Source: Intoshia linei
Lineage: Eukaryota > Animalia > Orthonectida
Length of the DNA stretch: 64,000 nucleotides
Assembly: GCA_001642005.1 (NCBI GenBank)
Contig: LWCA01000034.1
Coordinates: 1 to 64,000 of the forward strand
Reading direction: 5' to 3'
Shown: positions 1,826 to 31,548 of the stretch, in pieces
Position numbering within the stretch: the first letter of the stretch is position 1
Layout: each line of letters starts with the position of its first letter
Made by a program: the position numbers and the translations under genes
Notes under the pieces: generated by a model
Told to the model about the DNA's origin: nothing
Seen by the model: only the letters and a program-made list of their open reading frames with translations
Database searches by the model: none

Positions 1826-2908
1826 TTTAAATGTTTTAGAAATATTAATTGTGTAAATATTTACCCTTATTGTTGCTTGTTAACGAACGTGTCACGATTT
1901 CAGCGCTGATAAATTTAATATATATCTTTTAAGTATTTACTTATAAACAATATTTACTTAATGTTATTGTCAGCAATAGAAATTTAATTCATACAATTTA
2001 ATGTTTAACTTTTACAAGACAATTGCATGTATAGATGCCAAAAACTATACTCATAAATTTACATTGGTTTGTATACAAACCTTAATAAGGCGGTACCAAT
2101 ATAAATTTTGAACAAATTACTGCTCATACAATAACACAGTGCTTTCCAATCGGTGTGTCATATTTATATATTATTTAATTATTTATTTATTTTGGTGAAG
2201 TTATATTTGCGAACATTTCCGGAAAAAACTGTAATTGAAATGTGGATTTTATATTATTCTAAGACGGGTACTTATTTAAATAAAGCTGGACACACAGCCA
2301 CACACACTAACAAAAATCGCGCAGCATATTATATAAGTTAGGATTGTTTTAGGATACTAGTGGTAAAAATTTTCTTCAACGTTACCCAACTGCAATAAAA
2401 AATTTATCCTAACTGTAAGAATAATTTTAAAGTACATTTAGTAGATAAACTTACTATTAGCAGTACAAAATAACCATGAACATTGACGTTTCATAAGCCT
2501 CTAGTCCTCTGCACCTTGATAAAAAGAACTGACTATAAATGTTTCAAACCATAAATAATTTAATGTACATTTTTGACGTCAATTATTAGTAGAAAATGTT
2601 TTTTATTACATTTGTCACAACATATTGCTAAAATATTGAATATATTCAAATTATTAATATATTAGTGATAATTATTGGAACATTTGTCAATTATAGGAAT
2701 ATATTTTTGCAATATACATTTTTTTGTTGGTCATATTGTGAATCTAATAATTCAATATTGTCGATTTTATAAAATGTTTGACAAATTAGTTATTTTTCAT
2801 TTATTAGATGTCATTATTATTATTATTATAATACATTACATTTTTTTAAAAAGAAGTTGATGATTTTTTGCAATATTATAATTTTAATATTTCTTTTTTT
2901 TATTCAAG

Positions 2909-5900
2909 ATGCTTGTCGAGGTTAGAATTTTACTCTTTATATACATAATTTTGCGTATTTTTTTATTAATTGTTAATATAATGCTACAATATTAACTTTT
3001 AGTCAATTCCGCATCTACTCAATGTCAAGACATCAAAGATGAGAAAAAGTGTATAGATTCTTGTGAATGGAAGGATAAAAAATGCAAGGGTTAATATATT
3101 TATATTTGATATGAAAATTAGAACCTATTAGTATTCTGGTGTACCCTAGTTAAAAAAAGTATGAATTACATTCGTATTTTCTTGTTATTGAGATTAGGAA
3201 ATTGAAATTTTTCAGTACATATTTTACAAATACATTTTATCATTTGTTATTATTCTAGTGTTAGAGTTTAAAAATTAAAAAATTAACAAACTTGGAAGTT
3301 AAAAAACTTAATTTCTAATATAGTTTTTCGAGATTCATAGCTAGTTTAATTTGCAGAAATTGAGTCCATCTGGGTCAAAATTCCAGTTTATACTAGAATT
3401 TAAAAAAATGTAAATTCTGGCATAGTTTTTAAAATCAAGGCAGTATCGTATTTAAAGAAAACGGTTTAAAATCATTAACATTATCGCATCTCTCAACCTC
3501 AAACTTACATCTTCATGGTTAGAACCACGAATTACTATTTTTGATAAAAAGTATCAAGATTTTAAAAAACGTAAATTCTGGCATAGTTTTTAAAATCAAG
3601 CCAGTTTCGTAAATCGTAACCTCAATAAAGTGCAGTTTCAATCTCAAAACCACAATTACTCTTTTTCTAAAAAACGATTACAACCCTAGAATTATAAAAA
3701 AATTAAAGCTGATACAGTTATTTCCAGTTAACATGCACAAAAATTTTCAATCTCACAAAGTGACGACTGGATGATCAAAAAAGCACTTTAGTATCAGTTT
3801 GTATCAGTCGCGAGCCTCACACAAAAAATGTCTACTCAAATCATTATTAAACTAACAGTTTTAATTAATTAATAAAATAAAATAAGAAACAAAAATGGAA
3901 AAGTGCATAACTAATGCTAAAATTGTAATCATGAAAAATATGTAAAAAAATAGGGGTTAAAAATTTTGTTATAACGCGGGCCAAATTCCATTTTTTGGGT
4001 CGCATAATTGATACCCGGCGCAATAGCCAATTTATTATTTTTTTTATATAAATTTTTTTAATGCTGCTTAGTAATTTTATTTTTAATATAATCCGCGATA
4101 AATTTTATAATTTATTACTGGTACCCTGAAAAAAATGTGGAAACCACTTGTTTAGTCTAAACTGTATTTAATATACCAATTTATGTATCTCTGTAATGTT
4201 ATGTATTTACGTAATTTTATGTCCGGCCTACCCATATCATTTGCCCACGGCATGTTTCTGTATACAATGATTTATTTAATTTTAATTGATTAAATTCTAT
4301 TTTAATATATTGATTGCAAAATTATTAAATTTTATTGTTTTGTTAAATGAGATTTTGATTGTATTTAAATGAATGTTTGAATGTACATTTTTAAATCACA
4401 TAAAAAAATTAAATACATTTGTAGATATATGTAAAAATTTGAAGAAAGATGAATGTTCAATGGTTTGTACATGGATTGAAGATCATTGCGGAGGTATTTT
4501 CTATGTAAAATATAATATAATAAAATGTAAATTAAAGTGTCTCATAAAAAATAAATAATCATACATTTACATGTATTTTTGAATTTCTATTGCCAGATTA
4601 GTTTATTTTAACATGTAAATACATGACGTATAAAAAAATTATATTTCCAATTTATGAATACATTTCAACGAATATTGAAGATAATATGAGGTTTGGGTTA
4701 CCGGATGACTTTATTGGTGGTTTTTTTGACTTTCATAGCTCGATTCAGATACGCTAGCTCAAATTTATAACACTGTACAACATTTTTCGAAAATTTTCCA
4801 AATATCAGAACAAAATTTATTTTATCGTCAATACCGCATTGTCAGGATTCAAACGATATATCTGATTGTGTATGATCTTGTCGTAATTATTAGATATTCT
4901 CTAATTAAAAAGTATATATAAGATAATTTATATAATATATAGAATGCAGTTATGTTCCATCTAAACTTAAATTCAATTTTTTACCCATAAAAAATAATGG
5001 AAAAATCGAAAGAAAAAAATTGACTGTATTTAATAGATCTATATATCATATTCTTGAAAAAAATGGCCTCATCGACACTATGTGAAAAGTTGGCCCTAGA
5101 CATGACCTGTTTTTTGAAAGTAAAATTGGTATTTTATGAAAATAGCAGAATGTTTATACATATCTTATATTTACTTGAAAAAGGAGTTACCATTGTATCA
5201 AACAGTTTATAATTTTTCATTGTATCGGTTTAAAAAAAAGTTTTTTTATGAAAATACATAAAATTTTTATAATACAAATGCGTAAATAAATTATTTATGA
5301 CAATGTGTTTTGTGTGAATCACACATAATCCTCTATCAATGATATCACTTTCTTTCCAGCAAATTTTTTTTCAAATGATTTCAGTGTTTGATGGAACCGT
5401 TCACCATGCTCATCGGAGTGTATTTTGCAATTAAATTGTTACATTTTTTCAATACAAAATTTTGTTTAATAATTATTTAACAAAAATAACAATCCTCTTT
5501 CATTACAGGTAAAGACTACAATCTAGGTCAGTGCTTCTCAAACGTTTTTGAGCATTCCTCCCTGTGACACATATTTTTGTTCTATTCACCCCAATAAAAC
5601 AATTATTATGACATGTCATAATTGTGTAGGAATACAGAATTTGCACTTATAAAATGTGCTGAATTAATTAAATTTGAGTACACATGACGTCTTTACGTGA
5701 TCACATCATTTTAAATTTTCATTGTTTGTCTAAGGAATCATAAATAATGCATGGTATTTTCAATATTTTCATAAGAGTAAACATGTTTAAATCTACGTTG
5801 TAGATACCACTATCATTCAGAAATAAAAAAATATAGTAATTGTGATTGGCATAATTTATTTATTGATAAGAATAGCAATTAGATGTCTAACTTTAAAAAA

Positions 5901-8900
5901 AAATTTGATTTTAAAATTTGGTTAAACTGAATGTATGAAAGGGTTAATTCAATTTTGTATACGAAAAATCTAAATTTGGTTTTTTCTTTTGGAATCAGAT
6001 ACAGAGATTTCCGATATAAATTTAAATTTATTTAAAACAGCAACACTATTACAGTTTTAAAAAAATTTCTACTAGGTTTTATTTTTAAATGATAGACCAA
6101 CTTGCAAAATGTATATTCTCAAAAATAGAGGGAAATGTGTCTTCTCGTTACAGAAATAATATCATATTAATTTTATTTTATTCAAAGGATTATTGTATAT
6201 TTTAAATAAATAAGTGTACTATTTTGAGTAACTAATATTTTTTAAATACATAATTAAAAATGGTGAATCTAATGAAACTATAAAAATTTCAATTATGAAA
6301 ATATCTTTAAAAAAAAGGGCAAAATTTGCCCTAATCATAGGTTTTTGAAAGAATTTCTGGGATATTTTTATATAGTACAATTTCCACGAGAAGACGCAAA
6401 TATAATCCCCTGACACAAAATTATTGATAATCCAGATTTTTTTTAAATTAAGTTTTAATAATTAACAAATAGATATAATTTGAAATCCACCATAAAGAAT
6501 AATCATAACGCATGTTATATATTTTTTTAACTTTAACACGAAATGGTTCACATTTGATAGAGTAAAATTTTTTGATTTTATTAGGCGTAAGTCACAAATT
6601 AGACAATAATGATCATTGATTTAAAAGTAAATCAACTTTATATATTAGTTTAGTTGTATGTAACTACAGAAACGGAGGTTATTAAACCTTTCACTGTCTG
6701 TGTATTCTATGATATACAGTGTATATCATAGTATATTATACACAGCATAATTTTGAAATACTTTATTCTTTTATATTATATATTTTCACACAAGTAATTT
6801 AAAAATAATAGAAGTTTAAATTAAAACATAAATTCCAGACGTGTGGTGATAGTACATAAAATTGGATCAGATAGTAAAAGGGTTAATATTAATATTTAAA
6901 TATTAATTAATCTTTTAACTACAAGATAAATTTTTAAAATTTTTTCAAGAATGTAAAAATTATAATTCATATTTGCATATTATCTTATTTTTAATCAGAA
7001 ATTTTTTTCAGTGTTGTTCAGTGTTATCATTGGTTAATAATTATTTGTATACCTCTTTGGAACAAGACCTCAGAAGTGACTAAAATTTAAAAGATTAAAA
7101 CATATAATTTTCTAAGCTAGTTCATTGTTTGCTACTGCGATACATTGAGCTTGACATAGTGAAACTTCCTGGATAATTGATTGATGTTATATTTATTGAC
7201 GGGATGATTGATTTAAAGTTAAAATTAGTATAAAGTTTTCCAGTGTTCGCCAAATTCTTTTACGAGTGCCACTAGTGCTTGCAATTTCTCGAAAAAAAAT
7301 GAACTCAAACTGTTAGTAATACAATAAAAAATTTTTAATTATTGAAAAACTAAAAGTACTAACAGTTCCCAAATGGTTAATATTTTTGAAATAATGAAAG
7401 ATTACAATCTGGTATTAATTGGTTGTTACCTTTAAGTCTTTAATAAAACATCAAAAGTAGGAGACAATTGCGATTTATTTAACATTTTGTATCATCAAAA
7501 CTCAATACATTGGAATAAGTTCAAGATAAGTCATTTTTGAGACTGTAAAGGTGTACATTCAAATATTTTTATATTTATTATATCCCTTCGTTAAGAATGA
7601 ATATAGGTCTACCAGGGTAAAAAAGTATTATATCTTTTTCTTGTCTTTATGTTTCTTTCATCTCTCTCCAGTGTTATCTTTAATACACCATTTCTAATGA
7701 TTTACCACGAGAAAGCCTTCTTAATTCACAATAATCCTGACTTATGATGATATAAAAAAATTATACCGTCATGGCCAAAATCCCAAATTCCCTTTATTTT
7801 TTTTTGAAAACAGCCCTAGAATTTCAAAAAATGTACAGGTGGTAGAGTTGTATCATGTTAACACACATAAAAAATTTCAATCCTAATAAGTGACGACTTC
7901 ACGGTCAAAAAAGCATTTTAGTATTCATATATTTTTTTCCGAAATATATTTTATTAAAACAAAAAATGTAAAATAATTAACGGTCCGAAAATTTAAAAAA
8001 AAAATTATTCTGATAGAGCTTATTCCAGTTGATATAAATACAAAAGTTTAACCTGAGAAATCTACGCATTCCCGATGAAAAATAATTTTTAATATATTAT
8101 GAACCAATTTTAACCCCAAGAAATTTACGCATTCCCGGTGAAAAATAATTTTTAATATATTATCAACCAATATTTGTCAAATATTTCGATTAAAACCAAA
8201 AAGTGAAAATGTAAATATTGATACAAGGCCAAAAGTATGGACAAATTTTTAACATCAATCATTTTTATATTACAATCCTTTGCAATAATGGTAAAATTCG
8301 ACTGAAATATTTACAAAGTGAAGATTCAATTAATTATTTATACAAAATTGGTATTTTTAAGTATTTAGTATTGATACTGAATATGTGTCATCACATTGAA
8401 AATGACAAAATAGGTTTTTATAATTATATTTTTTTTGGAATTTATGCTATTTATGACAATTTTTAAGATTGGACTGTTTTTACTTTATTTTAATATTATA
8501 CACACATTTTGTCTAACAAATTAAAAAAATGGGATAATAATTGTTTATAAATTCTTTACGCAAATGTTAACAAAACAAAAAAAAGGATTGATAATAGTTA
8601 GTAGAATTTTTAAGTTAGATTTTCAACGTGAATTTATTTTTTTGGTATAATTAAAGAGTGCCCTCGGCAGAGCTAGGTGCTGTTTGTACGTAGTACAAAA
8701 CTGCCAAGATAGTATAATATATTAATATAATAAGTATTAAATAATTTTTTAAAGAATCGGAGACTTTGACAATTTTATTATTTTATAAAGTTAACTACTT
8801 TGGTTATAACCTTTAATTTAAAATTTAATGTCAATGAATTCTTCGCTCATATGTTTAAAATCCAATGCTTGTCAATTTTTCATTTACAAATTGGCGAAAC

Positions 8901-11900
8901 GTTTTTGATCAAATCTCGTAGTCTAGATTGATGACCTCGCATGGCCTGATCGCCGTCGGAACAAATACCAATATATTTTTCCATCTAAATCGCTATTTTG
9001 TTCTCCGATATAAGTTTACAAAATATCATGTTGTTATTATTAACATCATTATTTATGAATCTCACATTAGCAATTGTCTAATTTAGTGTTTTGTACATTT
9101 ATGTCTAAATTAGCATTTTCTAATTTTTTTTAAAAATTTTTTTAAAATAATGTTCAAAATATCTAGCGCCACCCACTTTGGCGAACACTAAAATAATACT
9201 TTTTGTATTCTATAACTATATTATGTATTACAAATTAAATTATTTGGATTGAAATTGTGAATTTTAAATAGAATTTAAATAATAAATTTATGAAAATTAC
9301 TTTTAATTAGCAAAACGCGATACATGTTTTACTCCAGAAGTTTATAAGGAATGTAAAAAAGCTAATAAAAATGATTGTGATGAGAATAATTGTCAATGGT
9401 ACGAGCATCAATGTGAAAGTATATATTAATCTATATATATATATATATATATAAATACATTAACATAATATTACTTTAGATTATTAATTATACAATTGTC
9501 CATTAACACGTGTTATTGAACAACATATTTTGCCTATGTAAGAGTAGTTAGCATGTAAATATGAAACGAAAAGTTGTATTTCGAATAAGACGTTATAATT
9601 AAAAATAATATAAATAAATAATAATCTGAATACCTCGCTAAAAAAATGGATGAATATAACGCAATTTTTAAATGCAGGTAAAATGTACAGCTTTTAAGTT
9701 TTTTTGATAATATTTTACTTGGCTTAAAGTTAATGGCTTTGTAAACCCGCCTAATTTTTACTTTTATCAAAAACTTCACAACTCGATACATAAGTCAAAC
9801 TGTTGTCAAATGAGATAAATACAATATCACGTACATGAATTTGTTTTAATTTCAGTTTGTCAATCTATATTTTAGTTAAAATGTTCGTGATAGCTAATTT
9901 TTTGACTTTACTAGGTTAATTTGGGTCGATTTGTTCCCATATTGTCAATAATATTTTTATATTTTCTTGTTCCGTATTTAAAGGGCTTTGGAATGATATA
10001 AATTATAATATTCTATACAAAAGTTGTTTTCTAGTCTTATACAGAGCTGTTGAGAGCCAGTAGTAGACCCGGGCCAAATGGAAATGTAGGCCCTATAAAA
10101 AATTTTTAAAAAATGGAACCTCTATACATTGTTTAATCAATTGTTCATTATCTTAAAATTAAAAATAACCGTTAGAAATTCCATTGGGTATTTGAAATTT
10201 TGGTATAATTAAGAAATTCCCAACATTACCTATTAATAAATTAAAAAAGTAGGCCCTCCTGATTGTAGACCCGGACATATGGCTCCAAGTCCCATTTCCA
10301 GGGTCCGGTTCTTATAAAAAATTGAATTTGATGTTACATTATATCTCGTAAAATGTATGTAGCGGAATTATTATAATAATGCTTATAATTATTAACTAAA
10401 ATAATATTTATATCAAGATTTGAAATAAATTGCGGAGAGAAAAATTGCTTAATTTATTAGCAAAGGATAGAGATGACCTTAAAGTTTAGACATAAAAAAT
10501 TTGATTTTGATTTCTTCATAAAATATTGATTAATAAAATTGTAATTTTTGACTATGAAGGTGCAAATTTCTGATACTGAAATGTATCATACAACAGTCGA
10601 AGGAAAAAAATTGCATTATAATGTTTTTTCAAGATTCTAAGATTCTTAATTTTTTATATAATCGGTAACACGTGGGACATGAATTGGTAAATAGCCAATG
10701 TAATTAATGTGTGTTGTTATTATTTGATATGTATTTTTTTAAGTGTTTTGCCATGGACATTAAGTTTATTTGGATTCGATGTGTCTAAATCAGGGTGGTC
10801 CAAACACATGGCGATTGAAGGCCAAAAAGTCAAAATTTCACAAATTAATCAGAAAATTATTACCGTATCATAATATAAATATTGTGCCAATTAAAAATAT
10901 AATTAGAATTTTATAAAGTTATCATAATATAAAAGGTCCCAAAAGTTATTATCGTAAAGTACAAAATTACTTAATTATTAATAGTTACATTATACATGTA
11001 GTAGTAATAAATGTACTTTAAATGGGAGTTTTTAGGAAATTTTTTTTGAACCTAACTTTCAAAAGGGGTTTTTAATATTTTTTTTGGAATTTATTGTTTT
11101 TGGCATATATACATGCAATTGTCTCGTAAGGGTTAAATATGCCACTACAATCGAAATATTTATTGATAAGTCTAAACTGGTAATGTCCCTTGTGTTTAGA
11201 ACATTGTCTATGTAATTTTGACCATTACGCGTGAATTATACTGTATTAAAACAATTTAGATAAGATTAGCCCCATTATTTGTAATGTTTGTGATAATCAA
11301 GACGAATGTGATGTGAGGAAGGGGTGTTTTTGGAGAAATACGAATCAATGCGGTATCATTTTATTCATTAGAATATTAGTTATTAAAAAGTATCATTTAC
11401 ATAAATATAAAGATAAATTAACATAACTAAAAAAGTTAATAAACTATTATGATCTTATATTAGTGAAATTGATAGTGATCGATTAGTAAATTTAGATATT
11501 TTATAAAAAATTTTTTGAAATCATTTCAATTTTAGTAATACATTTAATTAGTACCTTTAGATAGCAGCGATTTTAATTAATAATTACTATTATAATTATG
11601 TTGTGGTTTTAGGTCACTTTGAGTATGTTTTTAACAACTTCCATTTTATACATTCCATATTAATACAGAATTTTATATAAAAAATATGGGACGTTGAGAG
11701 TATACAGAAAACGGTCCAAGGCTAATCGTACTCATAAGTTGACTTAAAATAAATATTAAGTTAAAAGAAACCATTTAGATCAGGGGTGCACAACCTGCGG
11801 CCGTGGGCAATCCATGTCATCATAATCCAATATATCATTTTACTTCAAATTCAAGGGAAATGTTTTTATCAAAATGTTAAATTTTTGACCACTTTCTCAA

Positions 11901-14279
11901 AATGGATTTAAACTCTCTCAATGTAAAATTAAATTTTGTGCGACCGTAGTATCAATGAGTAAAGTAGCTTTGCGGGTGAATTAATGGAAAGGTTGTGCAC
12001 CCTAACCTAGATCAACCATTTTCAACGGTATCCATGTGGACCCCAGCTGTACACAGCGGTTTTTTGAGTCCACGAAAAATTTTACAGTTATATTATTGAA
12101 AGAAATAAAAAAGTGAAAATTGATATTTCAACAGTCATTTAAGTTTTTGTGTGTTTCGAAAAAATCATTTAAAAATCACATAATGAAAAAGGTGGATAAA
12201 TTTCAATTGTTAATATTACAAAGTTAACAAAGTTTAAAAGGAATGTTAGTCTTGAACGCTTTAAAATTTAAATGTGTAACTTTTAATTTTTTTTAGTAAT
12301 TGTGAATAGTTGTACTGATATAAATTCAAATACTGTTTGCAAATTAAATGATTGCAACTGGAAAGAAGACTTTTGCGATATAGGTTACTTTTAAATAATT
12401 TACCCCAATCATAAATTTAATTATCAAAACATTGCAAGAATAATTAATTAGGGTGTTATTAACTGTTTCAGATTAAAAAAAAATTATTTAAAATTTTAGT
12501 TGAAGCCACCTGTCCAACAGATTTTGAATTAAATAAATGTAAAAGTCAAACTAAACAATCGGATTGCGAAGATAAAAAATGCAGCTGGCATACAACCCAA
12601 TGCAGAGGTTTTGATAATTTTCAAATTAAAAATTGAATCCATTTAAACAATTCAGATAATAGCCTTGAAATCAAATGTAGTTTATGTGATTATGATAAAT
12701 GTTTGAATTTAAAAGGTTGCATGTGGAACGATGATGTTTGTGGTAATAAATATAATATTTATATATTGTATTTTTGTATTTCACAGTAAATTTGACAAAA
12801 TGTAAAGAAGCCAAGAATAAACATTCCTGTCAAGTAAATGGTTGTTGGTGGAATAAACCTGTTTGCGTTATTAGTGGTTATTAAACGTAAATACACGTGT
12901 ATATAATTATATTAGAAGATGAAGTAGATGCCAAAATATGTTCCCTTATAGTGAATACACATGACTGTGAACAACAAAAATGTAAATGGAATGAAGATTT
13001 CTGTCGAGGTTAAAATGTTAATAATATAAAAAATTTGAGTGACTGTACATTGTACTAAGTACAAACAGCATTTAGCTCTGCCGAGGACACATTTTTATTC
13101 TACCAAAAAAATAAATTCACGTTGAAAATCTAACTTAAAAATTCTACTATTCACTATTATCCATAAACAAGTGGTTCCCAAACTTGTTTCAGGTGGAACC
13201 ATCATATGACATTACTTTTTACTTTAAAGTGAATTATTCCATTTTAATTTTTTGTTTGTTAACATTTGCGTTAAGAATTTTAAAAACAATTGTTATCTTA
13301 TTTTTTTAATTTATTAGACAGAATGTGTGTATAATATTAAAAATAAAGTAAAAACAGTCCAATCCTAAAAATTGTCATAAATAGCATAAATTCCAAAAAA
13401 ATAAAATTAGTCCAATACTAAAAATTGTCATAAAGGTGTGAGTTTTGGAAATTGAAATTTATATTATTATATGTAAAATTTGTCATAAATAGTATAAAAT
13501 CCAGGAAAAATAAAATTATAAAAACATATTTTGTAATTTTCAATGTGATGATATATATTCAGTACCAATTTAATAAATACTTAAAAATACCCAATATATA
13601 TCATAATTAACCGAATCTTCATTTTATAAATTATTTTACTGTGTAAACTTAACAGCATGGTTAAAATTTTTCTACCACGGGCTAGTAATTTCACGTATCA
13701 CTTACTAAGTCAGTGACATATCGGTCAGTGATTTTTATATCAGCCTCAAGGACAATCCAGACGATTTATAAAATATTTTAAATTGTATTAAAAATTTTTA
13801 TATTTTTTAAAACAAAAAGGAGTTCTCATTCTAGCGTGGTCAACACATGATCCTTATAGATTCGGCTAAAAATGAACAATTAAATTCATAATTAGTAATG
13901 GTACAATTAATAGGGTCAAAAATCTATTTATATGAATAAAGAAAAATAATAATAATCCATCGTGTTCAACCCTTTATTAAAAGTGTACCTATTAAATTTG
14001 CTAGGATTTTATTTATAAATATTTGATAAAATGTAATTTAAATATTTAAATAGATACAACTAAATGTGATGGCATTGACTGTAAAAACTGCGATAGTACC
14101 CAAGGTTGTTGTTGGCAAAAACATGAATGTGTCGGTAAGTTAATTATATACAATCATTATACACATTTTCTAAAATTAATTTTATGATAGAAAAAGATAC
14201 CTGCGATACTGACAGTTTTGCAAATAAATATACATATTGTGGAGTTTTCATATTATATTCAATACTCATAGTATACTAA
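2909..14279 (+). CDS. Cys-rich CxW-repeat surface protein, ~345 aa, 12 exons: signal peptide + 10 exon-encoded modules + GPI-signal-like tail
   Basis: Exons: 2909-2954, 3003-3089, 4425-4493, 9311-9418, 11260-11352, 12297-12383, 12500-12607, 12656-12742, 12787-12876, 12916-13008, 14054-14134, 14191-14279. All introns are GT-AG and phase 1; the total is 1038 nt with no internal stop. It begins MLVEVRILLFIYIILLNSAST and ends YCGVFILYSILIVY*. Example modules are CQDIKDEKKCIDSCEWKDKKC and CKSQTKQSDCEDKKCSWHTTQC. Confidence 0.85.
4771..5460 (-). mobile_element. Decayed Chapaev-type (CMC superfamily) transposon remnant
   Basis: The minus strand at ~5420-5320 translates to HSDEHGERFHQTLKSFEKKFAGKKVISLIEDYV*, matching the SDEHGERFHQ...EKRY.G......DY.W transposase motif. 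A CACTG-type terminus sits at 4771. The family name is from recall. Confidence 0.5.
6686..6882. mobile_element. TTAA-flanked piggyBac-type MITE (copy 1)
   Basis: ttaa|ACCTTTCACTGTCTG ... CAGATAGTAAAAGGG|ttaa. Highly similar to 50298-50513; a partial copy starts at ~58198. Confidence 0.75.
7241..9190 (-). mobile_element. Decayed hAT-type element with a transposase remnant, interrupted by a Helitron-like insertion
   Basis: Termini are CAGTGTTCGCCAAA (7241) and TTTGGCGAACACTA (9177-9190). The minus strand near 7740-7690 reads DYCELRRLSRGKSL, similar to the hAT EVRWLSRGK motif. No clean TSD is visible. Confidence 0.5.
7760..8697 (+). mobile_element. Non-autonomous Helitron/Helentron-like element, 5'-truncated copy
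   Basis: Reverse-complement similarity to 17844-19100 over about 900 bp. The end is GTGCCCTCGGCAGAGCTAG..TTGTAC-GTA-GTACAA (terminal hairpin). There is an internal ~60-bp duplication at 8058-8170. Confidence 0.65.
11781..12005. mobile_element. hAT-type MITE
   Basis: CAGGGGTGCACAACCT ... AGGTTGTGCACCCTAA, flanked by atttagat and acctagat (imperfect 8-bp TSD). A related left end is at ~40219. Confidence 0.65.
13050..13640 (-). mobile_element. Non-autonomous Helitron/Helentron-like element, 3' part
   Basis: It shares the hairpin end (TGTACTAAGTACA..TAGCTCTGCCGAGGACAC) and the AATCCTAAAAATTGTCATAAATAGCATAAATTCC subrepeat with 17844-18420 and, inverted, with 8330-8697. Confidence 0.65.
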
Positions 14280-14370
14280 TGCTTTCTCGTTAAATTATTA
14301 TTTATTAAATAAATATTCATCACATTATATATTTATATTTATAAAATTTTAATTTATGAATAATATATAT

Positions 14371-17300
14371 TTAAAAATAATTATCATCGTCTTCAGGATT
14401 ATATCGCGGTTTAGAAGATTTGGCTCGGTTTATTCTACCAGATTTTGCGTTTCTAGGAATTTCAGTTTCATATTCAGAGTCTGAATTTTTATCGTAGTCT
14501 ACAGAGATATTTGAATTCTATAATTTTATTTAATTTTATTTTTAATTTTAATTACGTCACTATCCAAGTTGAATTCGATATCATTATTTTCATTTGAATA
14601 CTCTAAAAATAAATTAATATATATTTATTAGTGTTGCGATTCGTAATTTTTTTTGGAGTGCTCTGAAATTTTTTATAACAAAATCTGATATTATTACCTC
14701 CAATGGAGGTATAAAATTTCGATGAAAGAATAATGGAATCAAAAAATTGATATTAAAGTAAAACGGTTGGAACCATAACCCTTTTGCAAGCCGAAATTTA
14801 CATATACATTGTACGTTATTGTATGTAAGGATTTTAATTTATAATTATCAATTAAAATCTATCAAACTATAAAAATTATAAATATCTACTACATGTTAAT
14901 TTTTAGCCTCTCTAATACCCTAAATTGAGAATGGTGCAGCATATCGTGATGTACCGTATTATCTAAATACATTACTTGATTCACTCGATGAAGCATCAGA
15001 AGAAATTGAGGCAAGATTTTCATTACTTGATAATCTAGATATGCGGTTTTGTATTTCCTAAAGTTTAATATATAATTTTTTAATGTATATAATTTAATTT
15101 AAAATTTAATTGCATCAATTTAAAAAAAATTATTTTTTTAATAATTTTCAAAGTAGATTTTTTGGAAAAAACGTTTAAAAAAAAAAGATTTACTGAAACA
15201 TAGAACTAAATGTAGTAATAATGTATAATATTAATGTACCTTTTGGAATTCAATATTTTTCTTAGTATATTCTTGAATCAATACTTCATATTGGTGTTTA
15301 TTACGAAAAACATCCATATATCTCTCATATAAAACTTTTAATTCTTCTTCATATGTTTCAAATTCGTCCATGTAAGCAGGTCTAAAAATGATACAAATTT
15401 AAAATTAATATGCATTAAATTAAAAATCTTAAAATTTAAATTGTAATTTTAATTGTTTTAACTTAAATTCAATTTTCTTAAAACACTATAAATAAATCCA
15501 TTTAAGTATGGATTGAACGATTCAATTTGACACCAGCAAAAGATGATGAAATTATCAGATGGTATATTATAATATTGATATCCTTTACTTAAATTTTACA
15601 TAAAATGGAATGTTCATTTTGTCTGTTTGTTATTGAATATTAAAAAAATTAAGAGTCGTAAATTTAAAAAACCCATTTAAAATTTCCCATAAATTTTTCC
15701 CATACGCATAGGGCGTGTGTATGTCTATTTTTCTGTTAAAGAATTTGAGTACTTCATGGTATAAAACCCAATTTGCCCTTTTAAATTTGCCAATTAAAAA
15801 TAAAATGAAATTAAAATAGTCTAATTAATTAGAATAGAATAATTACTACACAAAGTAAAAGAATCTAATATTTCTAAAATATTAAAGTCAAATTGAGATT
15901 ATCAATCATAGTTTGATTTGAAGAAATTTGTATCGCTTGTTTAAACTTTATTATATGAGCACACTTTTTACATTTTTAATATGAAAAATTTATATAAAAT
16001 TTAAGTGTGCGATTTAAAATGAACACCCTGTAGATGCTGTTTGCACATAATACATAACAGTCAACCCAGTATTTTATATAAAGCATATAAAATTTTAAAT
16101 TACCTCACATTTTGCAAGGTTTCAAGTCTTTTAGAATTCCTAGTTAATTCAGCCGTTTTTTTATTTATTTTTGATTCAATATTTTTACTGTCACCTTTGA
16201 CTTTTTGTGTATCTTTTTCAATATTCTCAATAGATTTCTAAATGTTTAAATCAAAATTGTTTAAATTCTCGAGCCGTATTAATTAATTTTAAACAGATTG
16301 TAATGTTATTAAAACTAGTTAAAATGATGATATTGTCTAATTTTTTATCATTTTCACTCTATTAATCACTATTTACTTCATACATAATAGTAGTATATAT
16401 TTTTTTGGATTATAATCGAATTATTATTATATATTGAAGTTTAAATTATAAAATACGTAATTTAAAAATTTCTAATGTAATTATTGAAATTCCTGAGTCA
16501 AGACTGTTAACTAATACCTTTAAATGTATATAAAAAAGGTATGATTCCGAGAAAACATTTCTGAGGTAAACACCATAAAATTTTTCTATTTTGTAATATT
16601 GGTTGGTTGTGCAGCATTTCATTCTTAACTGGGGTTTGAAAAACCAATTCTATCTTTTAAATGTATGCATATATTTCGTTTTAACTGCTTTATAATAATC
16701 TATTCATTTCCATGTTTAATTAATTATATGTGACTATAATAGACTGGTTATAGTCAGTATTTATTTTTAAAATTCTAATGCAATAATTTTTCTACAAAAC
16801 CGTAGACCGAATTCATATTTGTATACTAATTTTGAATTAGTTAATATGTATACATACCTACATACATACATACATACCTGATACAGGTTGTCAAAGAGCA
16901 TAGAAAAAAACACCCAAAAGCTAAAAAATCAGATTATGTAAAAAAATAAATATTACCCTTACCGGGGCAGGGGAAATTTTTATAATTTTGAAAAAAATTT
17001 TTTGTGGTATGCTCCTACTTATACAAAATGGGGATGGTATGCAAAAATAGTTTTTGAAATTCAAAAAAAAAACTCAAAAATGAATCACCCTAATATGTAT
17101 ATTCCAACAGTACAAATTGTTTCAGATCTCAAAATACAGTATTTAAGCCAGTGTTCGTCAAATTCTTTTATTAGTCCACTTCTACAGGACTAAAAAAATG
17201 TCAAAAAATTCAAAAATAATTAATTAATTTCAGTTGTAAAAACAAATTTTAAATATTTTGTAGTACAATTCACATTTGATTTTAATTTAATTGTAATTTA

Positions 17301-23359: not shown

Positions 23360-26300
23360 ATGAGTCGCGAAATTTACAAGTATACCTTTAAATTTTAATA
23401 AATAATAAAAATTAATGTTATTATACAATTTAGGGAAATTTTGTGCCTGTCAGATGTAATGAACTGTAAGATGAATGAAATGAATTTCACCTGTGATGAT
23501 TTGACTCAACCGAATATGGCCCACCTTCGCAAAAAGTATTTATCAGTTTAAATTCAGTAATTTATAGATCGATAATATGATATAACATAAGTAGAAGGTG
23601 TGGTGTAAAGAGAAGTTAAATTTACTTTTGTTTAATATGCGAAATGTATTAATTTCTAATTTTTTCGTTTAATGCAGCTCGAGTAGAGATTGTTGTTAAA
23701 TAAAATCTTTTATTAATATATTTTTCACTAAAATACACCATTTATACGCTAACCGTCCTTGATTCTTCGATAGACTTGACACCCTAATCTACATGTATTT
23801 TAAATTTAGAATCGCACAATTTTGTCAAGATTTTTTACTTTTAAATATCAATACAAAGTTTATAAAAGTTGTAGATATATTATGGAAATGTTATGCATAT
23901 CAGATGATTACTAAATATCGAAAAGACGTAACATTTAATTTTTAAAATTAAACTTAAATTATATTAAATTTAATAAATTTCCGTATAATTTTATAGAAAC
24001 TAAAGTCTCCAAAATTGAAATACAATTTTTTTAAATACCAAAATTTTTTGAGTGAATGTGTCTGCTTTTATTTGAAACTATTACATCGATTGAAAAGTCG
24101 TTATATTCTTGAAAATACAATTCAATTCTCTGCAAAAATTGAACAAGACTATATATTTATATGTAATAATTTTAAAATGTATTTGTTACTTATTTTTAGG
24201 GGACGATTCAGCACTTAATAAATTACCTCTGGAAGATTTTACCATTTTAAATGAAGCCATTTGCAATATTTATTGTCACATTGGACATTTATATAGATAC
24301 ATGACAAATGAAATCAAGAAGGGTCCATCAATTGAAATGAATAAATCTATTCTTATGTACAATTTTGCTATATTTGCTTACCCAATGAAAGGAATCACCT
24401 TTAATTATCTTTCCATCGTAGCTCAATCGACAAATAATTATCTTGATGCGTTATATTATTACATGAGATGGTATTTTATTTTTTTATTGTATTTTTGATT
24501 GGTATAATAATTAACTATTGATTTGCTAGCATGGATTCTTATCAACCTTATGACGGCCTCAAAACGAATATGTTAATGTATCACAAATGTATGCGATGTG
24601 ACATTGCAAATTGGTATATTTTTCATTGTATTTCTTATTACTTTTGTGTTTAGTGCTTCCTCTATATGGAAAATCGACGAAGTTAATAAAATTATATTAC
24701 TGTTTACAAGAAACATTATAAAAATTTTTGACGTGTACTTTACAAATGAAATATAGTTGATTTTTTCAATTTAGCGATAAAATCAAAAGTAATTTCCACA
24801 ATGTTAATGATATTTCTTCGCCATATATTAATGATCAAAAGTTTAAACAACTATTGTGTGAAATTACAACAAATTCAATTATCAAGGTTTATTTTTAAAT
24901 TTTAAATTTCAAAATTTAGATTTCTACATGTACATTAATAATGTTGGATAATTGTAAATCTATCGGTATTTTGGGGCTATCTTAGTTTTATTAGTTGTTT
25001 TTTAGATTATATTTTCAATGAGAGCATGCGATTTATGTATTGGTTATTTATTTTACTTGTTGATAAGGCCAATGATGTTTTTAAATCTTTATATATTGAA
25101 GATGTTATTTATAGTAATTTTAATTTGTTTTTTTATTAATTTTTTTAGATTTACAACAAGATATTTCAACGCTACATTATTTACAATGTTTTGAATATTG
25201 TCCTAAAATTAAAAATGCGATTTTGCACAGTATTTGTGGTTTATTTTTAGTTTAAATTAAATAATATTCAGAAAAAAAAGAGTAAATAGTTAATGTAACG
25301 TGACATTGACATTTTTTATGTATGTTAACTGGAAAAACCTGTATTAAATGTGATATTTTTAAACCTAAGACTTATATTCTATATTTTTATAAAAAAGGAA
25401 ATTTGGGTTTTGACATCAATTTCTGAAAATGAAATTTAAGATAAAATATCACTCAAAAATCTTTAGAAATTGATGTTTTTAAAACCCTACACTACTTTTT
25501 TTAAAAAAATGAAATAAAAGGAAATAAGTTTTATTTAAAATTTTGATTAATTCGACTTTTACAACACTTGGTGGACTGTAGTATTTTTATAAATCTTTTA
25601 CTTATCCAGTAAACGAGTGTATGTCATGTATTATTTTAAAAACTATCCAGGATTTATGTTTTATAAAATTATAGTACGTTTCATTTTTTAAAAATGGGAT
25701 AATTTGTGGTTTTGACCATGAAGGTGTGCGTTTCTGAGGCTGAGATTTACGACAATGTTAATCGTTTTAAAACGCGTCTAAGAATGTATGTTTTATTAAA
25801 TTTTTGTGTTGATTTATTGTTAAAAAAAAGGGAAAATTGGGTTTTTCACCATAAAGGACTCAAATTCGGAAACTGAAAAATAGATATAAACACGCACTGT
25901 GAAAAACGGTATTAGAAATTTATTTAAATATATTTATATATTAAATTCTACAACAGTCAATGTTTTAAATAAACGGTTACGACACACACAGACATTCAAT
26001 TTTATATAAGTCAAGGATACTTTTTGGCAGCTAGCTCTGCCGTGAGCGTAGGGTTGCCAACTGCGTTATTTTCCCCCTGAGAATTCGGTTCAACTTAATG
26101 TTGGTAACCCGACGTGAGAGGAATTTTTAATTTTAAGACAAATCTTTTTTAATTGGTATAATTAAGAGATTAAAAACTATTCGTTTTTTAATGTATTTAT
26201 AATTATTACTTTTTGCATTATTTAATCAATATCTAGTAGATAATACATCAATTGACGATGAATCTAGTGACGTTTCTTCAAAATCATCATCTATGACATC

Positions 26301-29573: not shown

Positions 29574-31548
29574 ATGTCTTATTTAACCGATAGAATTTAC
29601 AAGGCCCGAAACAAATTTGAGAAACAAAAGTATAAAAAAGATACGGAATATTTTTATAGAAGATGCTTGGGATTGTATGAAAATGCAGCATTAGATTATG
29701 AAAATTATCAAGAAATGAGCAAAGATAAAAATATTGATGAGAATAAAATTAAAGGAAGGTCTTTTATTATAATTGTATTAGTTGAACTTTTTTCCTTCAT
29801 TATCATGAATTTTATAATTGGAGCTCCAGTAATTTTTTATACGTATACTGGTGGTATAATGTTTTCATATGTTGAAAGTGAAAATGCTATTAAGGTTTGT
29901 TATGAAACGAAACAAACGTTTATTGATCTACAACTTTCCACGATAAATAATATTTTTGATATTTATGATGCTTTTGGAAAGGATGATCTGCATAATGACA
30001 GTTTGAATATTAACTCTTTGATTAGTAAGGTTTTTTCTTTTTATTTATATTTTTGATAGATAACGAAAATTATATTATGACTGCTACGGAATTAGCAAAT
30101 TTTAATGTTACTTTGGCTCAAAATTCGACAAATACAAATACCAATGAAATTGATAATCCTACGAGTGCCATGAGGGAAATTTTGGAAAGATTTATTATTA
30201 AAGTGAACGAAATTAACTATCGGTCTGGTTTATGTGAGGAGATATCGATAAAGGAATGGGGAGTAAAATCTGGATTCCTTTATGCATTGAGTATAATGTC
30301 TACTATAGGTATGTTTATTTGTATTTATACATTTTCTATTTTAAGGTTACGGACACGTAACTCCAAAAACAATTTATGGTCAAATAGCGACAATATTATA
30401 CGGAATAATTGGAATACCAATATTTTTGATATGGATTGCAATACTTGGAAGTTATGCGGCTCGATTCACTAAATTTGCATTATATTCAATTACAAAAAGT
30501 TTGTTTTCTTTGATATACTACACTTCAAAGCAAGAAGACAATGACCACCAAGAAAACGTAATGACTATGGCTGAATTGGAGGATGAACAATACTGTCAAG
30601 ATGATGTCATGGGAAGTACTAAACTAGCTTCTTTTCCTATATCTCTTGTTTTGATTATATTGGCTTTAAATTTTGTAGTGGGAATGTTCATATTTGTTAA
30701 AATTGAAGGAAGGTCATATTCAACAATGTTATACTTTTGCTTTATTACTCTTTCAACCATTGGATTTGGAGATATTGTTCCAGGGTTTAGAAATGATAGT
30801 GAAGTGTATTTGTATATTACTATTGCTTACATTATCATTGGAATCGCGCTTGTTTCTATGTGCTTGTCCCTCATTCAGGATCAATTGTATTCTAGCTTTG
30901 GTAATTTTTTATTATTCTATATAGTGGATATATTGTGTCTCAGGCTTGTCAACTGAGGTTCATATGATATAAATTTTTAACTTTTTCTACCTTTAACCCA
31001 GTGACATGTTAGCATGTACATGAGTGTTCGCCAAATTATTTTTGAGTGCTGCCCTTGAAGGACTAAAAAAATGTCGCGTCACCCTTCTAAAGAATTTAAA
31101 ATTTGTTTTGTGGCATAGAAACCTGAAAAGATGCAGAAAACTATGCGAGAAGCTCTAAATGTTATTTTCTATCAACTCTTAAATATTTTATTAAGGATTG
31201 GCGCAAACACGAGCCTATCCAGTAGTATTAGCAATGCTGATGACATCATTGAAATACACAATTAGATTTTCACACGTCATTACATGGACTGTTTACTTGT
31301 GCTGTCGTAAAAATGTTTAGGCTTTAATCGTTCCAATTTTATCATGTTCGATGACCCAAATTCGGTCGTGAAGTTTGCAATGTAAAGTTTGCGTGATAGT
31401 ATTTTTTTTAAATATTATCATGTCATCTAAATATTAATATTTTTATTTAGCTACATTAATGACTAAATTCAATAAATTGCAAGTGAAAGTACGCAAAATG
31501 TTTGATAGGGGTAGCAAAACCCGACAAGAAATTGAAAGAATTTTATAA
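29574..31548 (+). CDS. Two-pore-domain (K2P/TWIK family) potassium channel, 4 exons
   Basis: Exons: 29574-30024, 30060-30308, 30346-30900, 31451-31548. M1 ...YTYTGGIMFSYVE; P1 W...SGFLYALSIMSTIG|YGHVTPKT; M2 ILYGIIGIPIF; P2 YFCFITLSTIGFGDIVPG; M4 YIIIGIALVSMCLSLIQ. Confidence 0.93.

What the first reader, a model, noticed from the sequence alone, without database searches (positions are those of the whole stretch)
2909..14279. Hidden one-exon-one-module CxW-repeat surface protein: candidate combinatorial surface-antigen system
Seen in the sequence: ten internal exons of 69-108 nt, each a multiple of 3 and bounded by phase-1 introns, each encoding exactly one C-x(7-8)-C-x(3-5)-C-x-W-x(4-5)-C module. 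Only Cys and Trp are conserved between modules. They lie between a signal-peptide exon and an exon ending in a hydrophobic tail with no cytoplasmic segment (GPI-signal-like). Established knowledge: symmetric phase-1 exons are the classic substrate for exon shuffling in extracellular proteins, and CxW Cys repeats recall ciliate surface antigens and PSI-like modules. Inference: any subset of modules can be skipped, duplicated or swapped in frame, so the locus could produce variable disulfide-stabilised coat proteins, which would suit a parasite. I recognise no known animal family with this architecture.
Basis: partly seen in the sequence, partly recalled or inferred. Interest (0 to 1): 0.9.

Follow-up and report, generated by a model that had tools for sequence, protein, structure and literature searches.

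The report
Cysteine-module surface rod gene, orthonectid parasite
This is a real, expressed gene of the parasitic worm Intoshia linei that encodes a probably lipid-anchored surface rod of ten small disulfide-bonded modules, one per exon; it belongs to a small undescribed family, and nothing shows that its exons are mixed to make variants.

Summary
Ten C-x7-8-C-x3-5-C-x-W-x4-5-C modules lie on the + strand, each on its own phase 1-1 exon of 69-108 nt. They sit between a signal-peptide exon and an exon ending in a 12-residue hydrophobic tail. Spliced contigs from three public runs join E3 through E12 at exactly these junctions.

The gene is not hidden. It is NCBI hypothetical protein A3Q56_00547 of Intoshia linei (345 aa).

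No Pfam or NCBIfam family fits. The nearest known things are the four-cysteine structured region of the Trypanosoma brucei VSG C-terminal domain and the PSI core. The VSG domain is the only PDB sequence hit and the top fold hit for two modelled modules. All of these matches are weak.

The genome holds 22 more such modules, all on 81-nt phase 1-1 exons, spread over six other contigs. Metagenomic surface proteins carry look-alike tandem modules.

The combinatorial exon-skipping idea has no support. Only the full-length isoform was assembled. The modules are old and diverged. Four modules carry an odd cysteine, apparently paired across neighbouring exons.

Best reading: a constitutive, acidic, probably GPI-anchored rod on the parasite surface.

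The scan earlier noted a different GPI cysteine-rod family on other DNA of this genome.

The parts
2860..2920 (+). Exon 1, version A: ATG at 2860, hydrophobic signal-like peptide, phase-1 donor at 2921.
   Evidence: Read from the sequence; hydrophobicity. Not separable from version B with the RNA data.
2909..2954 (+). Exon 1, version B, as in the database protein P0001: ATG at 2909, charged start followed by a hydrophobic stretch, phase-1 donor at 2955.
   Evidence: P0001 sequence. It is identical to my model over the last 329 residues.
3003..3089 (+). Exon 2, module 1 (4 Cys), 87 nt, phase 1-1.
4425..4493 (+). Exon 3, module 2 (4 Cys), 69 nt.
   Evidence: The loose end of an X1 contig before 9309 carries the end of this exon.
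9311..9418 (+). Exon 4, module 3, 108 nt, with an N-terminal extension carrying a fifth Cys (type A).
11260..11352 (+). Exon 5, module 4, 93 nt, with an extra Cys in a CxxC (type B).
12297..12383 (+). Exon 6, module 5 (4 Cys), 87 nt.
12500..12607 (+). Exon 7, module 6, 108 nt, type A (5 Cys). Modelled by AlphaFold2.
12656..12742 (+). Exon 8, module 7, 87 nt, type B (5 Cys).
12787..12876 (+). Exon 9, module 8 (4 Cys), 90 nt. The donor is fixed by the RNA joint 12875>12915 (cut +1).
12916..13008 (+). Exon 10, module 9 (4 Cys), 93 nt. Carries the only coding difference to the RNA contigs (12951 G>A, Val to Met). Modelled by AlphaFold2.
14054..14134 (+). Exon 11, module 10 (6 Cys), 81 nt.
14191..14279 (+). 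Exon 12: a short type-A-like stub with one Cys, a candidate omega site (Ser, then x, then Ala), an 8-residue spacer, a 12-residue hydrophobic tail, and the stop codon at 14277-14279.

Best explanation
This is a 12-exon gene of the orthonectid Intoshia linei, annotated as hypothetical protein A3Q56_00547. The gene, its exon structure and its constitutive splicing in the data on hand are shown. The rest is inferred, as follows. An N-terminal signal peptide takes the protein into the secretory pathway. Each of the ten internal exons encodes one self-contained mini-domain of 23-36 residues, predicted as helix, helix, beta-hairpin, held by two disulfides around one buried Trp. [quoted passage not shown] Extra cysteines in exons 4/5 and 7/8 probably staple neighbouring modules together. 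The ten modules form an acidic rod of about 36 kDa (pI about 5) with very few glycosylation sites. Its C-terminal signal is swapped for a GPI anchor, so the rod stands on the parasite's outer membrane as a structural coat or spacer protein. It is one member of a small family specific to I. linei.
For: Gene and splicing: ten modules against none in shuffles; phase-1 GT..AG introns throughout; single spliced contigs of 1066, 1085 and 1800 nt in three runs join the exons in genomic order. Identity: P0001 is 100% the NCBI I. linei protein. Secretion and anchor: hydrophobic N-terminus and a hydrophobic C-terminal tail with no residues after it; GPI transamidase subunits Gaa1 and PIG-T are encoded in the genome, and two collinear weak matches suggest PIG-K. 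Fold: AlphaFold2 models of two modules have pLDDT 77 and 80. Among 48,161 PDB representatives, both models have the same three best hits, and for the second model these are the only chains with Z >= 2: VSG C-terminal domains 2jwg and 5m4t (Z 2.3-2.7, 30-35 residues aligned, 23-37% identity) and plexin A2 PSI2 (Z 2.2-2.3). The VSG domain 2jwg is also the best hit (E 0.011) and then the sole hit (E 0.086) of the two module profiles against all PDB sequences. Family: 22 further modules on 81-nt phase 1-1 exons lie on six other contigs. One of those contigs has a signal-like first exon and another a hydrophobic-tail last exon. Known biology of the nearest relative: VSG C-terminal structured regions have four conserved cysteines each, a conserved fold, sit next to the GPI anchor and act as compact spacers or hinges (PMC12226131).
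Against: GPI anchoring rests on inspection only; no predictor was available, and the hydrophobic tail is short. All similarity to the VSG C-terminal domain and to PSI is below the families' thresholds (13.2 bits against a cut-off of 21.4; Z below 3). The weak Pfam hits scatter over Trefoil, PSI and VSG_C, so the shared C..GCxW pattern may be convergent. Both models rest on one 29-row alignment, and AlphaFold2 was trained on the PDB, so the two fold results are not independent. The stage and tissue of expression are unknown, so 'surface coat' is inference. After the guessed cleavages the mature core has 47 cysteines, an odd number, which no simple pairing scheme explains.
Confidence: 0.6

Rival explanations
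1. One reading: the symmetric exons are skipped, duplicated or swapped to give many variable coat proteins, that is, a combinatorial antigen system.
For: All ten internal exons are phase 1-1 and multiples of 3, so any skip would stay in frame. Inverted copies of one interspersed repeat lie in introns 3 and 10 and could in principle pair in the pre-mRNA. Assembled contigs drop rare isoforms, so minor skipping cannot be excluded.
Against: Only consecutive-exon joints are listed in three runs, and the 5' and 3' contigs have equal depth (244.6 and 222.3). The one contig break inside the gene, at E5/E6 in X1, is explained by a low-depth unspliced contig (depth 5.8, record 5). Modules are 0-25% identical outside Cys and Trp, so there has been no recent exchange. 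The five-Cys exons would leave unpaired cysteines if skipped singly. There is only one amino-acid difference between the genome and the RNA contigs. The paralogous modules form a distinct subfamily with different spacing (x8, x4, x6), not donor copies.
Confidence: 0.06
2. It is a secreted matrix, cuticle or adhesion protein that is not GPI-anchored. The hydrophobic end would be a weak membrane tether, or would be removed without lipid addition, and the modules would serve as binding units rather than as a passive rod.
For: The hydrophobic tail is only 12 residues long, and the omega site is guessed. The PIG-K match is below threshold. Adult orthonectids have a microvillar cuticle that needs matrix proteins (PMC6543705). 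PSI-like modules occur in receptors and adhesion proteins.
Against: A C-terminal hydrophobic stretch with no residues after it, preceded by small residues and a polar spacer, is the classic GPI signal layout. The tail is too short for a stable transmembrane helix. Gaa1 and PIG-T are present.
Confidence: 0.22
3. The modules are true, highly diverged members of a known family (PSI, or the VSG C-terminal domain), so the protein is an ordinary member of a known domain class.
For: Top PDB fold hits for two modules. The VSG domain is the only PDB sequence hit that recurs with both profiles. Foldseek's first row is MET. One module hits Pfam PSI at E 0.014 and one hits VSG_C at 0.12.
Against: None of these reaches a curated threshold. 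The Pfam PSI model finds two true PSI domains elsewhere in this genome but none of these exons. PSI has six to eight cysteines, against four here. The VSG C-terminal domain is known only from African trypanosomes. Six modules hit Trefoil just as weakly, which shows that the pattern is not specific.
Confidence: 0.12

Closest known systems
Structured region of the Trypanosoma brucei VSG C-terminal domain (Pfam PF10659; PDB 2jwg, 5m4t, 1xu6)
   Same: A mini-domain of about 30 residues with four conserved cysteines and a C-x7-C-x4-5-C-x-W core. It is the best PDB hit by sequence profile and by predicted fold. It lies directly next to a GPI anchor on a parasite surface protein and can occur in tandem, up to two copies in a VSG (PMC12226131).
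   Different: The scores are below the family cut-off. Here ten copies make up the whole protein, with no large N-terminal variable domain. The organism is an animal, not a kinetoplastid. The family is small, not thousands of genes, and there is no sign of switching.
PSI (plexin-semaphorin-integrin) domain, Pfam PF01437
   Same: A small disulfide-rich extracellular module with a G-C-x-W core. The plexin A2 PSI2 core superposes on 26 residues at 1.5-1.7 A. Some modules also carry the CxxC seen in PSI domains.
   Different: There are four cysteines and about 27 residues instead of six to eight cysteines and about 50 residues. The Pfam model does not detect these exons, although it does detect two true PSI domains in the same genome.
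Tandem C-x8-C-x4-C-[YF]-W-[YW]-x3-C-H modules in uncharacterised metagenomic surface proteins (P0002-P0009 and others)
   Same: The same cysteine and tryptophan spacing, an acidic residue before the second Cys, and Gly before the third. There are 6-10 tandem copies next to a C-terminal membrane anchor or sorting signal. Whole-protein E-values go down to 1.5e-14, and profile-profile probability is 91%.
   Different: These proteins are intron-less and probably prokaryotic or protist, of unknown taxon. The modules often follow other domains (PKD, beta-propeller-like). No Pfam or NCBIfam model covers them. The profile-profile test is partly circular, because the modules were picked by the Cys/Trp pattern.
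Classic one-module-per-exon extracellular proteins with phase 1-1 introns (EGF, Ig and similar exon-shuffling substrates)
   Same: Every module is bounded by phase-1 introns, and exon length equals module length.
   Different: The module type is not one of the known shuffled animal domains. The family seems confined to this lineage.
The other GPI-anchored cysteine-rod family noted in this genome (furin-like repeats with a Ly6 cap; scan note s1-778016)
   Same: The same organism and the same general design: a signal peptide, many cysteine-module exons, a GPI-like end, and a fixed exon order.
   Different: A different module type (furin-like, no Trp) and a different locus. I did not test it here.

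Membership tests
PSI domain (PF01437) | Match to the Pfam model above its curated cut-off (23.1 bits). | tested here: not met
   P0001 matches no family at E <= 1. The six-frame genome scan finds two other PSI domains but none of these exons. One of 29 modules reaches E 0.014.
PSI domain (PF01437) | Six to eight conserved cysteines in about 50 residues. | tested here: not met
   There are four invariant Cys in 23-36 residues.
PSI domain (PF01437) | PSI fold. | tested here: inconclusive
   Plexin A2 PSI2 scores Z 2.2-2.3 at rmsd 1.5-1.7 over 26 residues. MET is the first Foldseek row at E 6.4.
VSG C-terminal domain (PF10659) | Match to the Pfam model above its cut-off (21.4 bits). | tested here: not met
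   The best module scores 13.2 bits, E 0.12. The genome scan finds nothing.
VSG C-terminal domain (PF10659) | Structured region with four conserved cysteines and the conserved small fold. | tested here: inconclusive
   The four-Cys pattern is met. 2jwg and 5m4t are the top fold hits, but at Z 2.3-2.7. 2jwg is the PDB sequence hit, at E 0.011 and 0.086.
Trefoil / P-domain (PF00088) | Six cysteines with a CC-W ... W-C-F signature, above the cut-off. | tested here: not met
   Six of 29 modules hit, with best E 0.0045, all below threshold. The modules have only four Cys and no second Trp.
GPI-anchored protein | N-terminal signal peptide, and a C-terminal hydrophobic stretch with no cytoplasmic residues, preceded by small omega residues and a polar spacer. 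| tested here: met
   Hydrophobicity windows at residues 1-19 and 336-350. The tail layout is Ser-x-Ala, then 6-8 polar residues, then 12 hydrophobic residues, then the stop. This rests on inspection, not on a trained predictor.
GPI-anchored protein | The organism encodes the GPI transamidase. | tested here: met
   Gaa1 at 49.9 bits. PIG-T/Gpi16 at 94.9 bits. The PIG-K candidate is below the cut-off.
GPI-anchored protein | Lipid anchor demonstrated on the protein. | not testable with these tools
   This needs PI-PLC release or mass spectrometry.
Exon-choice diversity systems (cassette or mutually exclusive exons) | Several exon combinations seen in RNA. | tested here: not met
   Only the full exon order was assembled in three runs, and no skipping joint is listed. 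Contigs can miss rare forms.
Ciliate surface antigens (Paramecium_SA and relatives) | Match to the family model. | tested here: not met
   There is no Pfam hit for P0001 or for any module.

The most novel reading that the evidence does not exclude
The four-cysteine CxW unit is an undescribed, widely scattered extracellular mini-domain. It would be truly related to the structured region of the trypanosome VSG C-terminal domain and to the PSI core, and it is also found in tandem in uncultured microbes' surface proteins. On this reading, Intoshia linei has built a whole GPI-anchored coat-protein family from it. That would be a second, animal example of a parasite standing its surface layer on VSG-stalk-like modules, possibly with low-level exon skipping tuning rod length.
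Probability: 0.15. Interest if true: 0.6.

Novelty: new variant of a known kind. Interest (0 to 1): 0.4.

Why it matters
Nothing is known about the molecules at the surface of orthonectids, which are extremely reduced animal parasites that live as a syncytium inside their hosts. This gene and its paralogues give concrete candidates for that surface that can be raised as antibody targets. The module is also a clean, unannotated mini-domain that could be added to domain libraries. Its resemblance to the GPI-proximal module of trypanosome VSGs is a testable case of either deep homology or convergence in parasite coat design. It does not look like a new mechanism of antigenic variation.

Tried and rejected
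- Pfam and NCBIfam scans of single modules, of P0001 and of the look-alike proteins gave nothing above threshold.
- The word-based search with P0001 found only P0001 itself.
- The ESM Atlas gave only unnamed clusters scoring 0.90-0.92 and no structural match.
- Foldseek against the PDB gave no significant row.
- The Pfam VSG_C model found nothing in a scan of the genome.
- The search for related loci with P0004 in genome contigs confirmed no relative, so the taxa of the metagenomic look-alikes stay unknown.
- Paper searches for the locus tag, for Intoshia with 'cysteine-rich', and for a VSG C-terminal domain / PSI link found nothing relevant.
- The last exon has no paralogue by protein search.
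- Comparing the near-duplicate contigs C249 and C520 gave five exon differences, too few to infer selection. By my own comparison of the translated modules, four of the five change the amino acid.
- The three-exon cassette idea (E4-E6 against E7-E9) is supported by exon lengths and extra-cysteine positions, but by only 18-23% identity.
- The joined, spliced protein was never typed into a search tool. Searches used exon references or the database protein P0001. The joined model was built only inside local scripts, for counts.


Full report
**What is there.** The window is AT-rich, about 25% G+C throughout. A six-frame regex scan finds exactly ten matches to C-x(6-9)-C-x(2-6)-C-x-W-x(3-6)-C. All ten are on the + strand between 3023 and 14130, and fifty shuffles of the window gave none.

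Each match sits in a short open frame with an AG acceptor two bases before the frame and a GT donor one base after it, so both flanking introns are phase 1. Adding a first and a last exon gives a 12-exon model:
- E1 2860-2920
- E2 3003-3089
- E3 4425-4493
- E4 9311-9418
- E5 11260-11352
- E6 12297-12383
- E7 12500-12607
- E8 12656-12742
- E9 12787-12876
- E10 12916-13008
- E11 14054-14134
- E12 14191-14279

The model has no internal stop and encodes 350 residues, 50 of them Cys. The internal exons are 87, 69, 108, 93, 87, 108, 87, 90, 93 and 81 nt long.

**Is it a gene.** Three public runs from one 2024 study hold 36% of the sampled words of 12297-13010, which is about what spliced RNA would hold. 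I laid them on 9000-14400. Single contigs of 1066, 1085 and 1800 nt carry GT..AG joints at exactly the predicted E4>E5 through E11>E12 junctions. These fix the E9 donor at 12877. A loose end before 9309 carries the last bases of E3.

The lengths of contig upstream of E4 (180 and 219 nt) fit E3 + E2 + part or all of E1 with nothing skipped. No exon-skipping joint is listed. The 5' and 3' contigs of the deepest run have the same depth (244.6 and 222.3). The one break inside the gene, at E5/E6 in X1, coincides with a low-depth (5.8) unspliced contig running from intron 5 into E6. Contigs can miss rare isoforms, so minor skipping is not excluded.

**Identity.** A profile of the ten modules, searched against 1.84 billion representative proteins, returned P0001 (345 aa, ten matched stretches, E 2.9e-73). 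The word-based search names P0001 as NCBI 'hypothetical protein A3Q56_00547 [Intoshia linei]' and finds no other full-length relative. The 41.6-Mb assembly size fits that organism, from my own knowledge.

P0001 equals my model over its last 329 residues. It differs only in the first exon, which uses ATG 2909 and a donor at 2955. Both first exons give a hydrophobic, signal-like start. Version B has the more canonical layout: a charged n-region, then a Ser-Ala-Ser cleavage region supplied by E2. The RNA on hand cannot decide between them. Either way, the gene is annotated, not hidden.

**The ends.** The C-terminus consists of a polar stretch, then 12 hydrophobic residues, then the stop. A Ser-x-Ala about 19 residues from the end is a plausible omega site. 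That is the GPI-signal layout, and the tail is too short for a transmembrane helix.

The genome encodes Gaa1 and PIG-T. Two collinear sub-threshold exon matches suggest PIG-K. GPI anchoring is therefore plausible but inferred.

The mature core would be about 309 residues and 36 kDa, with pI 5.0, 47 Cys and one N-x-S/T sequon.

**The module.** Only four Cys and one Trp are invariant. Outside those columns the modules are 0-25% identical.

E4 and E7 (both 108 nt) carry an N-terminal extension with a fifth Cys. E5 and E8 carry an extra Cys in a CxxC. E6 and E9 are plain. This supports an old three-exon cassette (a lead from scan notes s1-789615 and s1-778097), but the identity is only 18-23%. These odd cysteines most likely pair across neighbouring modules. 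If so, single-exon skipping would be structurally costly.

**Comparison with known families.**
- Pfam and NCBIfam assign nothing.
- Scanned one by one, the 29 modules give only sub-threshold, scattered hits: Trefoil in six modules, PSI in one, VSG_C in one.
- The Pfam PSI model finds two real PSI domains elsewhere in this genome but none of these exons.
- Against all PDB sequences, the ten-module profile's best hit is the C-terminal domain of T. brucei VSG ILTat1.24 (2jwg, E 0.011). For the 29-module profile it is the only hit (E 0.086).
- AlphaFold2 models of modules E7 and E10, made with the 29-module alignment, reach pLDDT 77 and 80. Both show helix, helix, hairpin.
- In an exhaustive structural comparison with 48,161 PDB representatives, both models have the same top three, and for E10 these are the only chains with Z >= 2: VSG C-terminal domains 5m4t and 2jwg (Z 2.3-2.7, 30-35 residues aligned, 23-37% identity) and plexin A2 PSI2 (Z 2.2-2.3, rmsd 1.5-1.7 over 26 residues).
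- Foldseek's first, non-significant row is MET.

All absolute scores are weak, as they must be for 30 residues. The two models share one alignment, and AlphaFold2 has seen these PDB entries. I therefore treat 'VSG-C-terminal-domain-like / PSI-core-like fold' as the best description, not as family membership.

For context, VSG C-terminal domains contain one or two structured regions with four conserved cysteines each and a conserved fold. They lie next to the GPI anchor and behave as compact spacers or hinges (PMC12226131).

**Relatives elsewhere.** Only 27 of 1.84 billion representatives score E < 0.001 against the module profile. Apart from P0001, the best are metagenome proteins with 6-10 tandem C-x8-C-x4-C-[YF]-W-[YW]-x3-C-H units. 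These sit beside PKD-like or propeller-like parts and a C-terminal membrane anchor or sorting tail. A few look like protist proteins.
- None has a name or a taxon.
- No Pfam or NCBIfam model covers the units.
- No relative was confirmed in the reference prokaryote genomes.
- A local profile-profile comparison gives 91% probability. It is partly circular, because I picked those units by the Cys/Trp pattern.

**Paralogues.** The first own-genome scan seemed to find only this gene, but its weakest hits turned out to be real. A profile built from them finds 22 more modules on contigs C2556 (5), C3414 (5), C520 (4), C249 (3), C2692 (3) and C3017 (2).

All 22 are C-x8-C-x4-C-x-W-x6-C on 81-nt phase 1-1 exons, and two sequence types are recognisable among them. 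C2556 has a signal-like first exon upstream of its modules. C2692 has a last exon with a hydrophobic tail. C249 and C520 are about 91% identical copies, either haplotypes or recent duplicates.

Several of these contigs are tiny, so the number of genes is unknown. It is probably a handful. This is a small family, distinct from the window's gene, and not a reservoir of interchangeable copies.

**Reading.**
- Shown: a real, expressed, constitutively spliced gene with one module per exon.
- Inferred: secretion, two disulfides per module, inter-module staples, GPI anchoring, and a role as an acidic rod in the parasite's surface layer.
- Unknown: the life-cycle stage. The parasite has a host-dwelling plasmodium and a free ciliated adult with a microvillar cuticle (PMC6543705).

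The combinatorial-antigen idea is not supported. What remains is a lineage-specific variant of a familiar design, the cysteine-module GPI surface protein of parasites. Its module is undescribed and looks most like the stalk module of trypanosome VSGs. The scan has separately noted a different GPI cysteine-rod family (furin-like repeats) elsewhere in this genome, which I did not test.

**Limits.**
- Read laying could be used only once, on 9000-14400, so exons 1-3 were seen only indirectly.
- The spliced protein was searched exon by exon, by reference, or through the database entry P0001. The joined model was used only in local scripts.

Noticed in passing
window 8340-8700 and 13050-13600: Introns 3 and 10 hold inverted copies (77-98% complementary over about 550 nt) of one interspersed repeat. 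Contig depth over 12982-13343 is about 4,350 in X1, against about 222 for the exons, so the element is very abundant in the runs.
   Followed up: partly
window 14374-14517 (- strand): A convergent gene's open exon on the minus strand ends about 95 nt downstream of this gene's stop codon. The 1800-nt X1 contig runs from E6 through E12 and about 1 kb beyond 14400, so the two transcripts abut or overlap at their 3' ends.
   Followed up: partly
window 2860-2954: There are two competing first exons (ATG 2860 with donor 2921; ATG 2909 with donor 2955), both signal-like. If the 2955 donor is used on a transcript that starts upstream of 2860, the first ATG opens a 21-codon upstream ORF that overlaps the annotated start.
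   Followed up: partly
window 41539-45327 (- strand): An uninterrupted 1262-codon ORF, unusual in this intron-rich AT-rich genome, has no Pfam match at E <= 0.001. A 411-codon ORF at 46909-48144 (-) is equally blank.
   Followed up: no
window 24109-24498 and 30426-30956 (+ strand): An exon with an Est1/SMG5-type DNA/RNA-binding domain and an exon with a two-pore potassium channel pore domain (Ion_trans_2, E 2.9e-13). This agrees with the scan note about an SMG5 / K2P gene pair.
   Followed up: partly
G000 contigs C249 (1-1166) and C520 (1-1294): Two tiny contigs carry the same three paralogue module exons at about 91% overall identity. The exons and the short introns between them are nearly identical, while the flanks are diverged. 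They are uncollapsed haplotypes or a recent duplication.
   Followed up: partly
window 11760-12060: Intron 5 holds a G+C-richer island with terminal inverted sequences (MITE-like). Several runs show variant letters and small rearrangements there, as expected for a multi-copy element.
   Followed up: no
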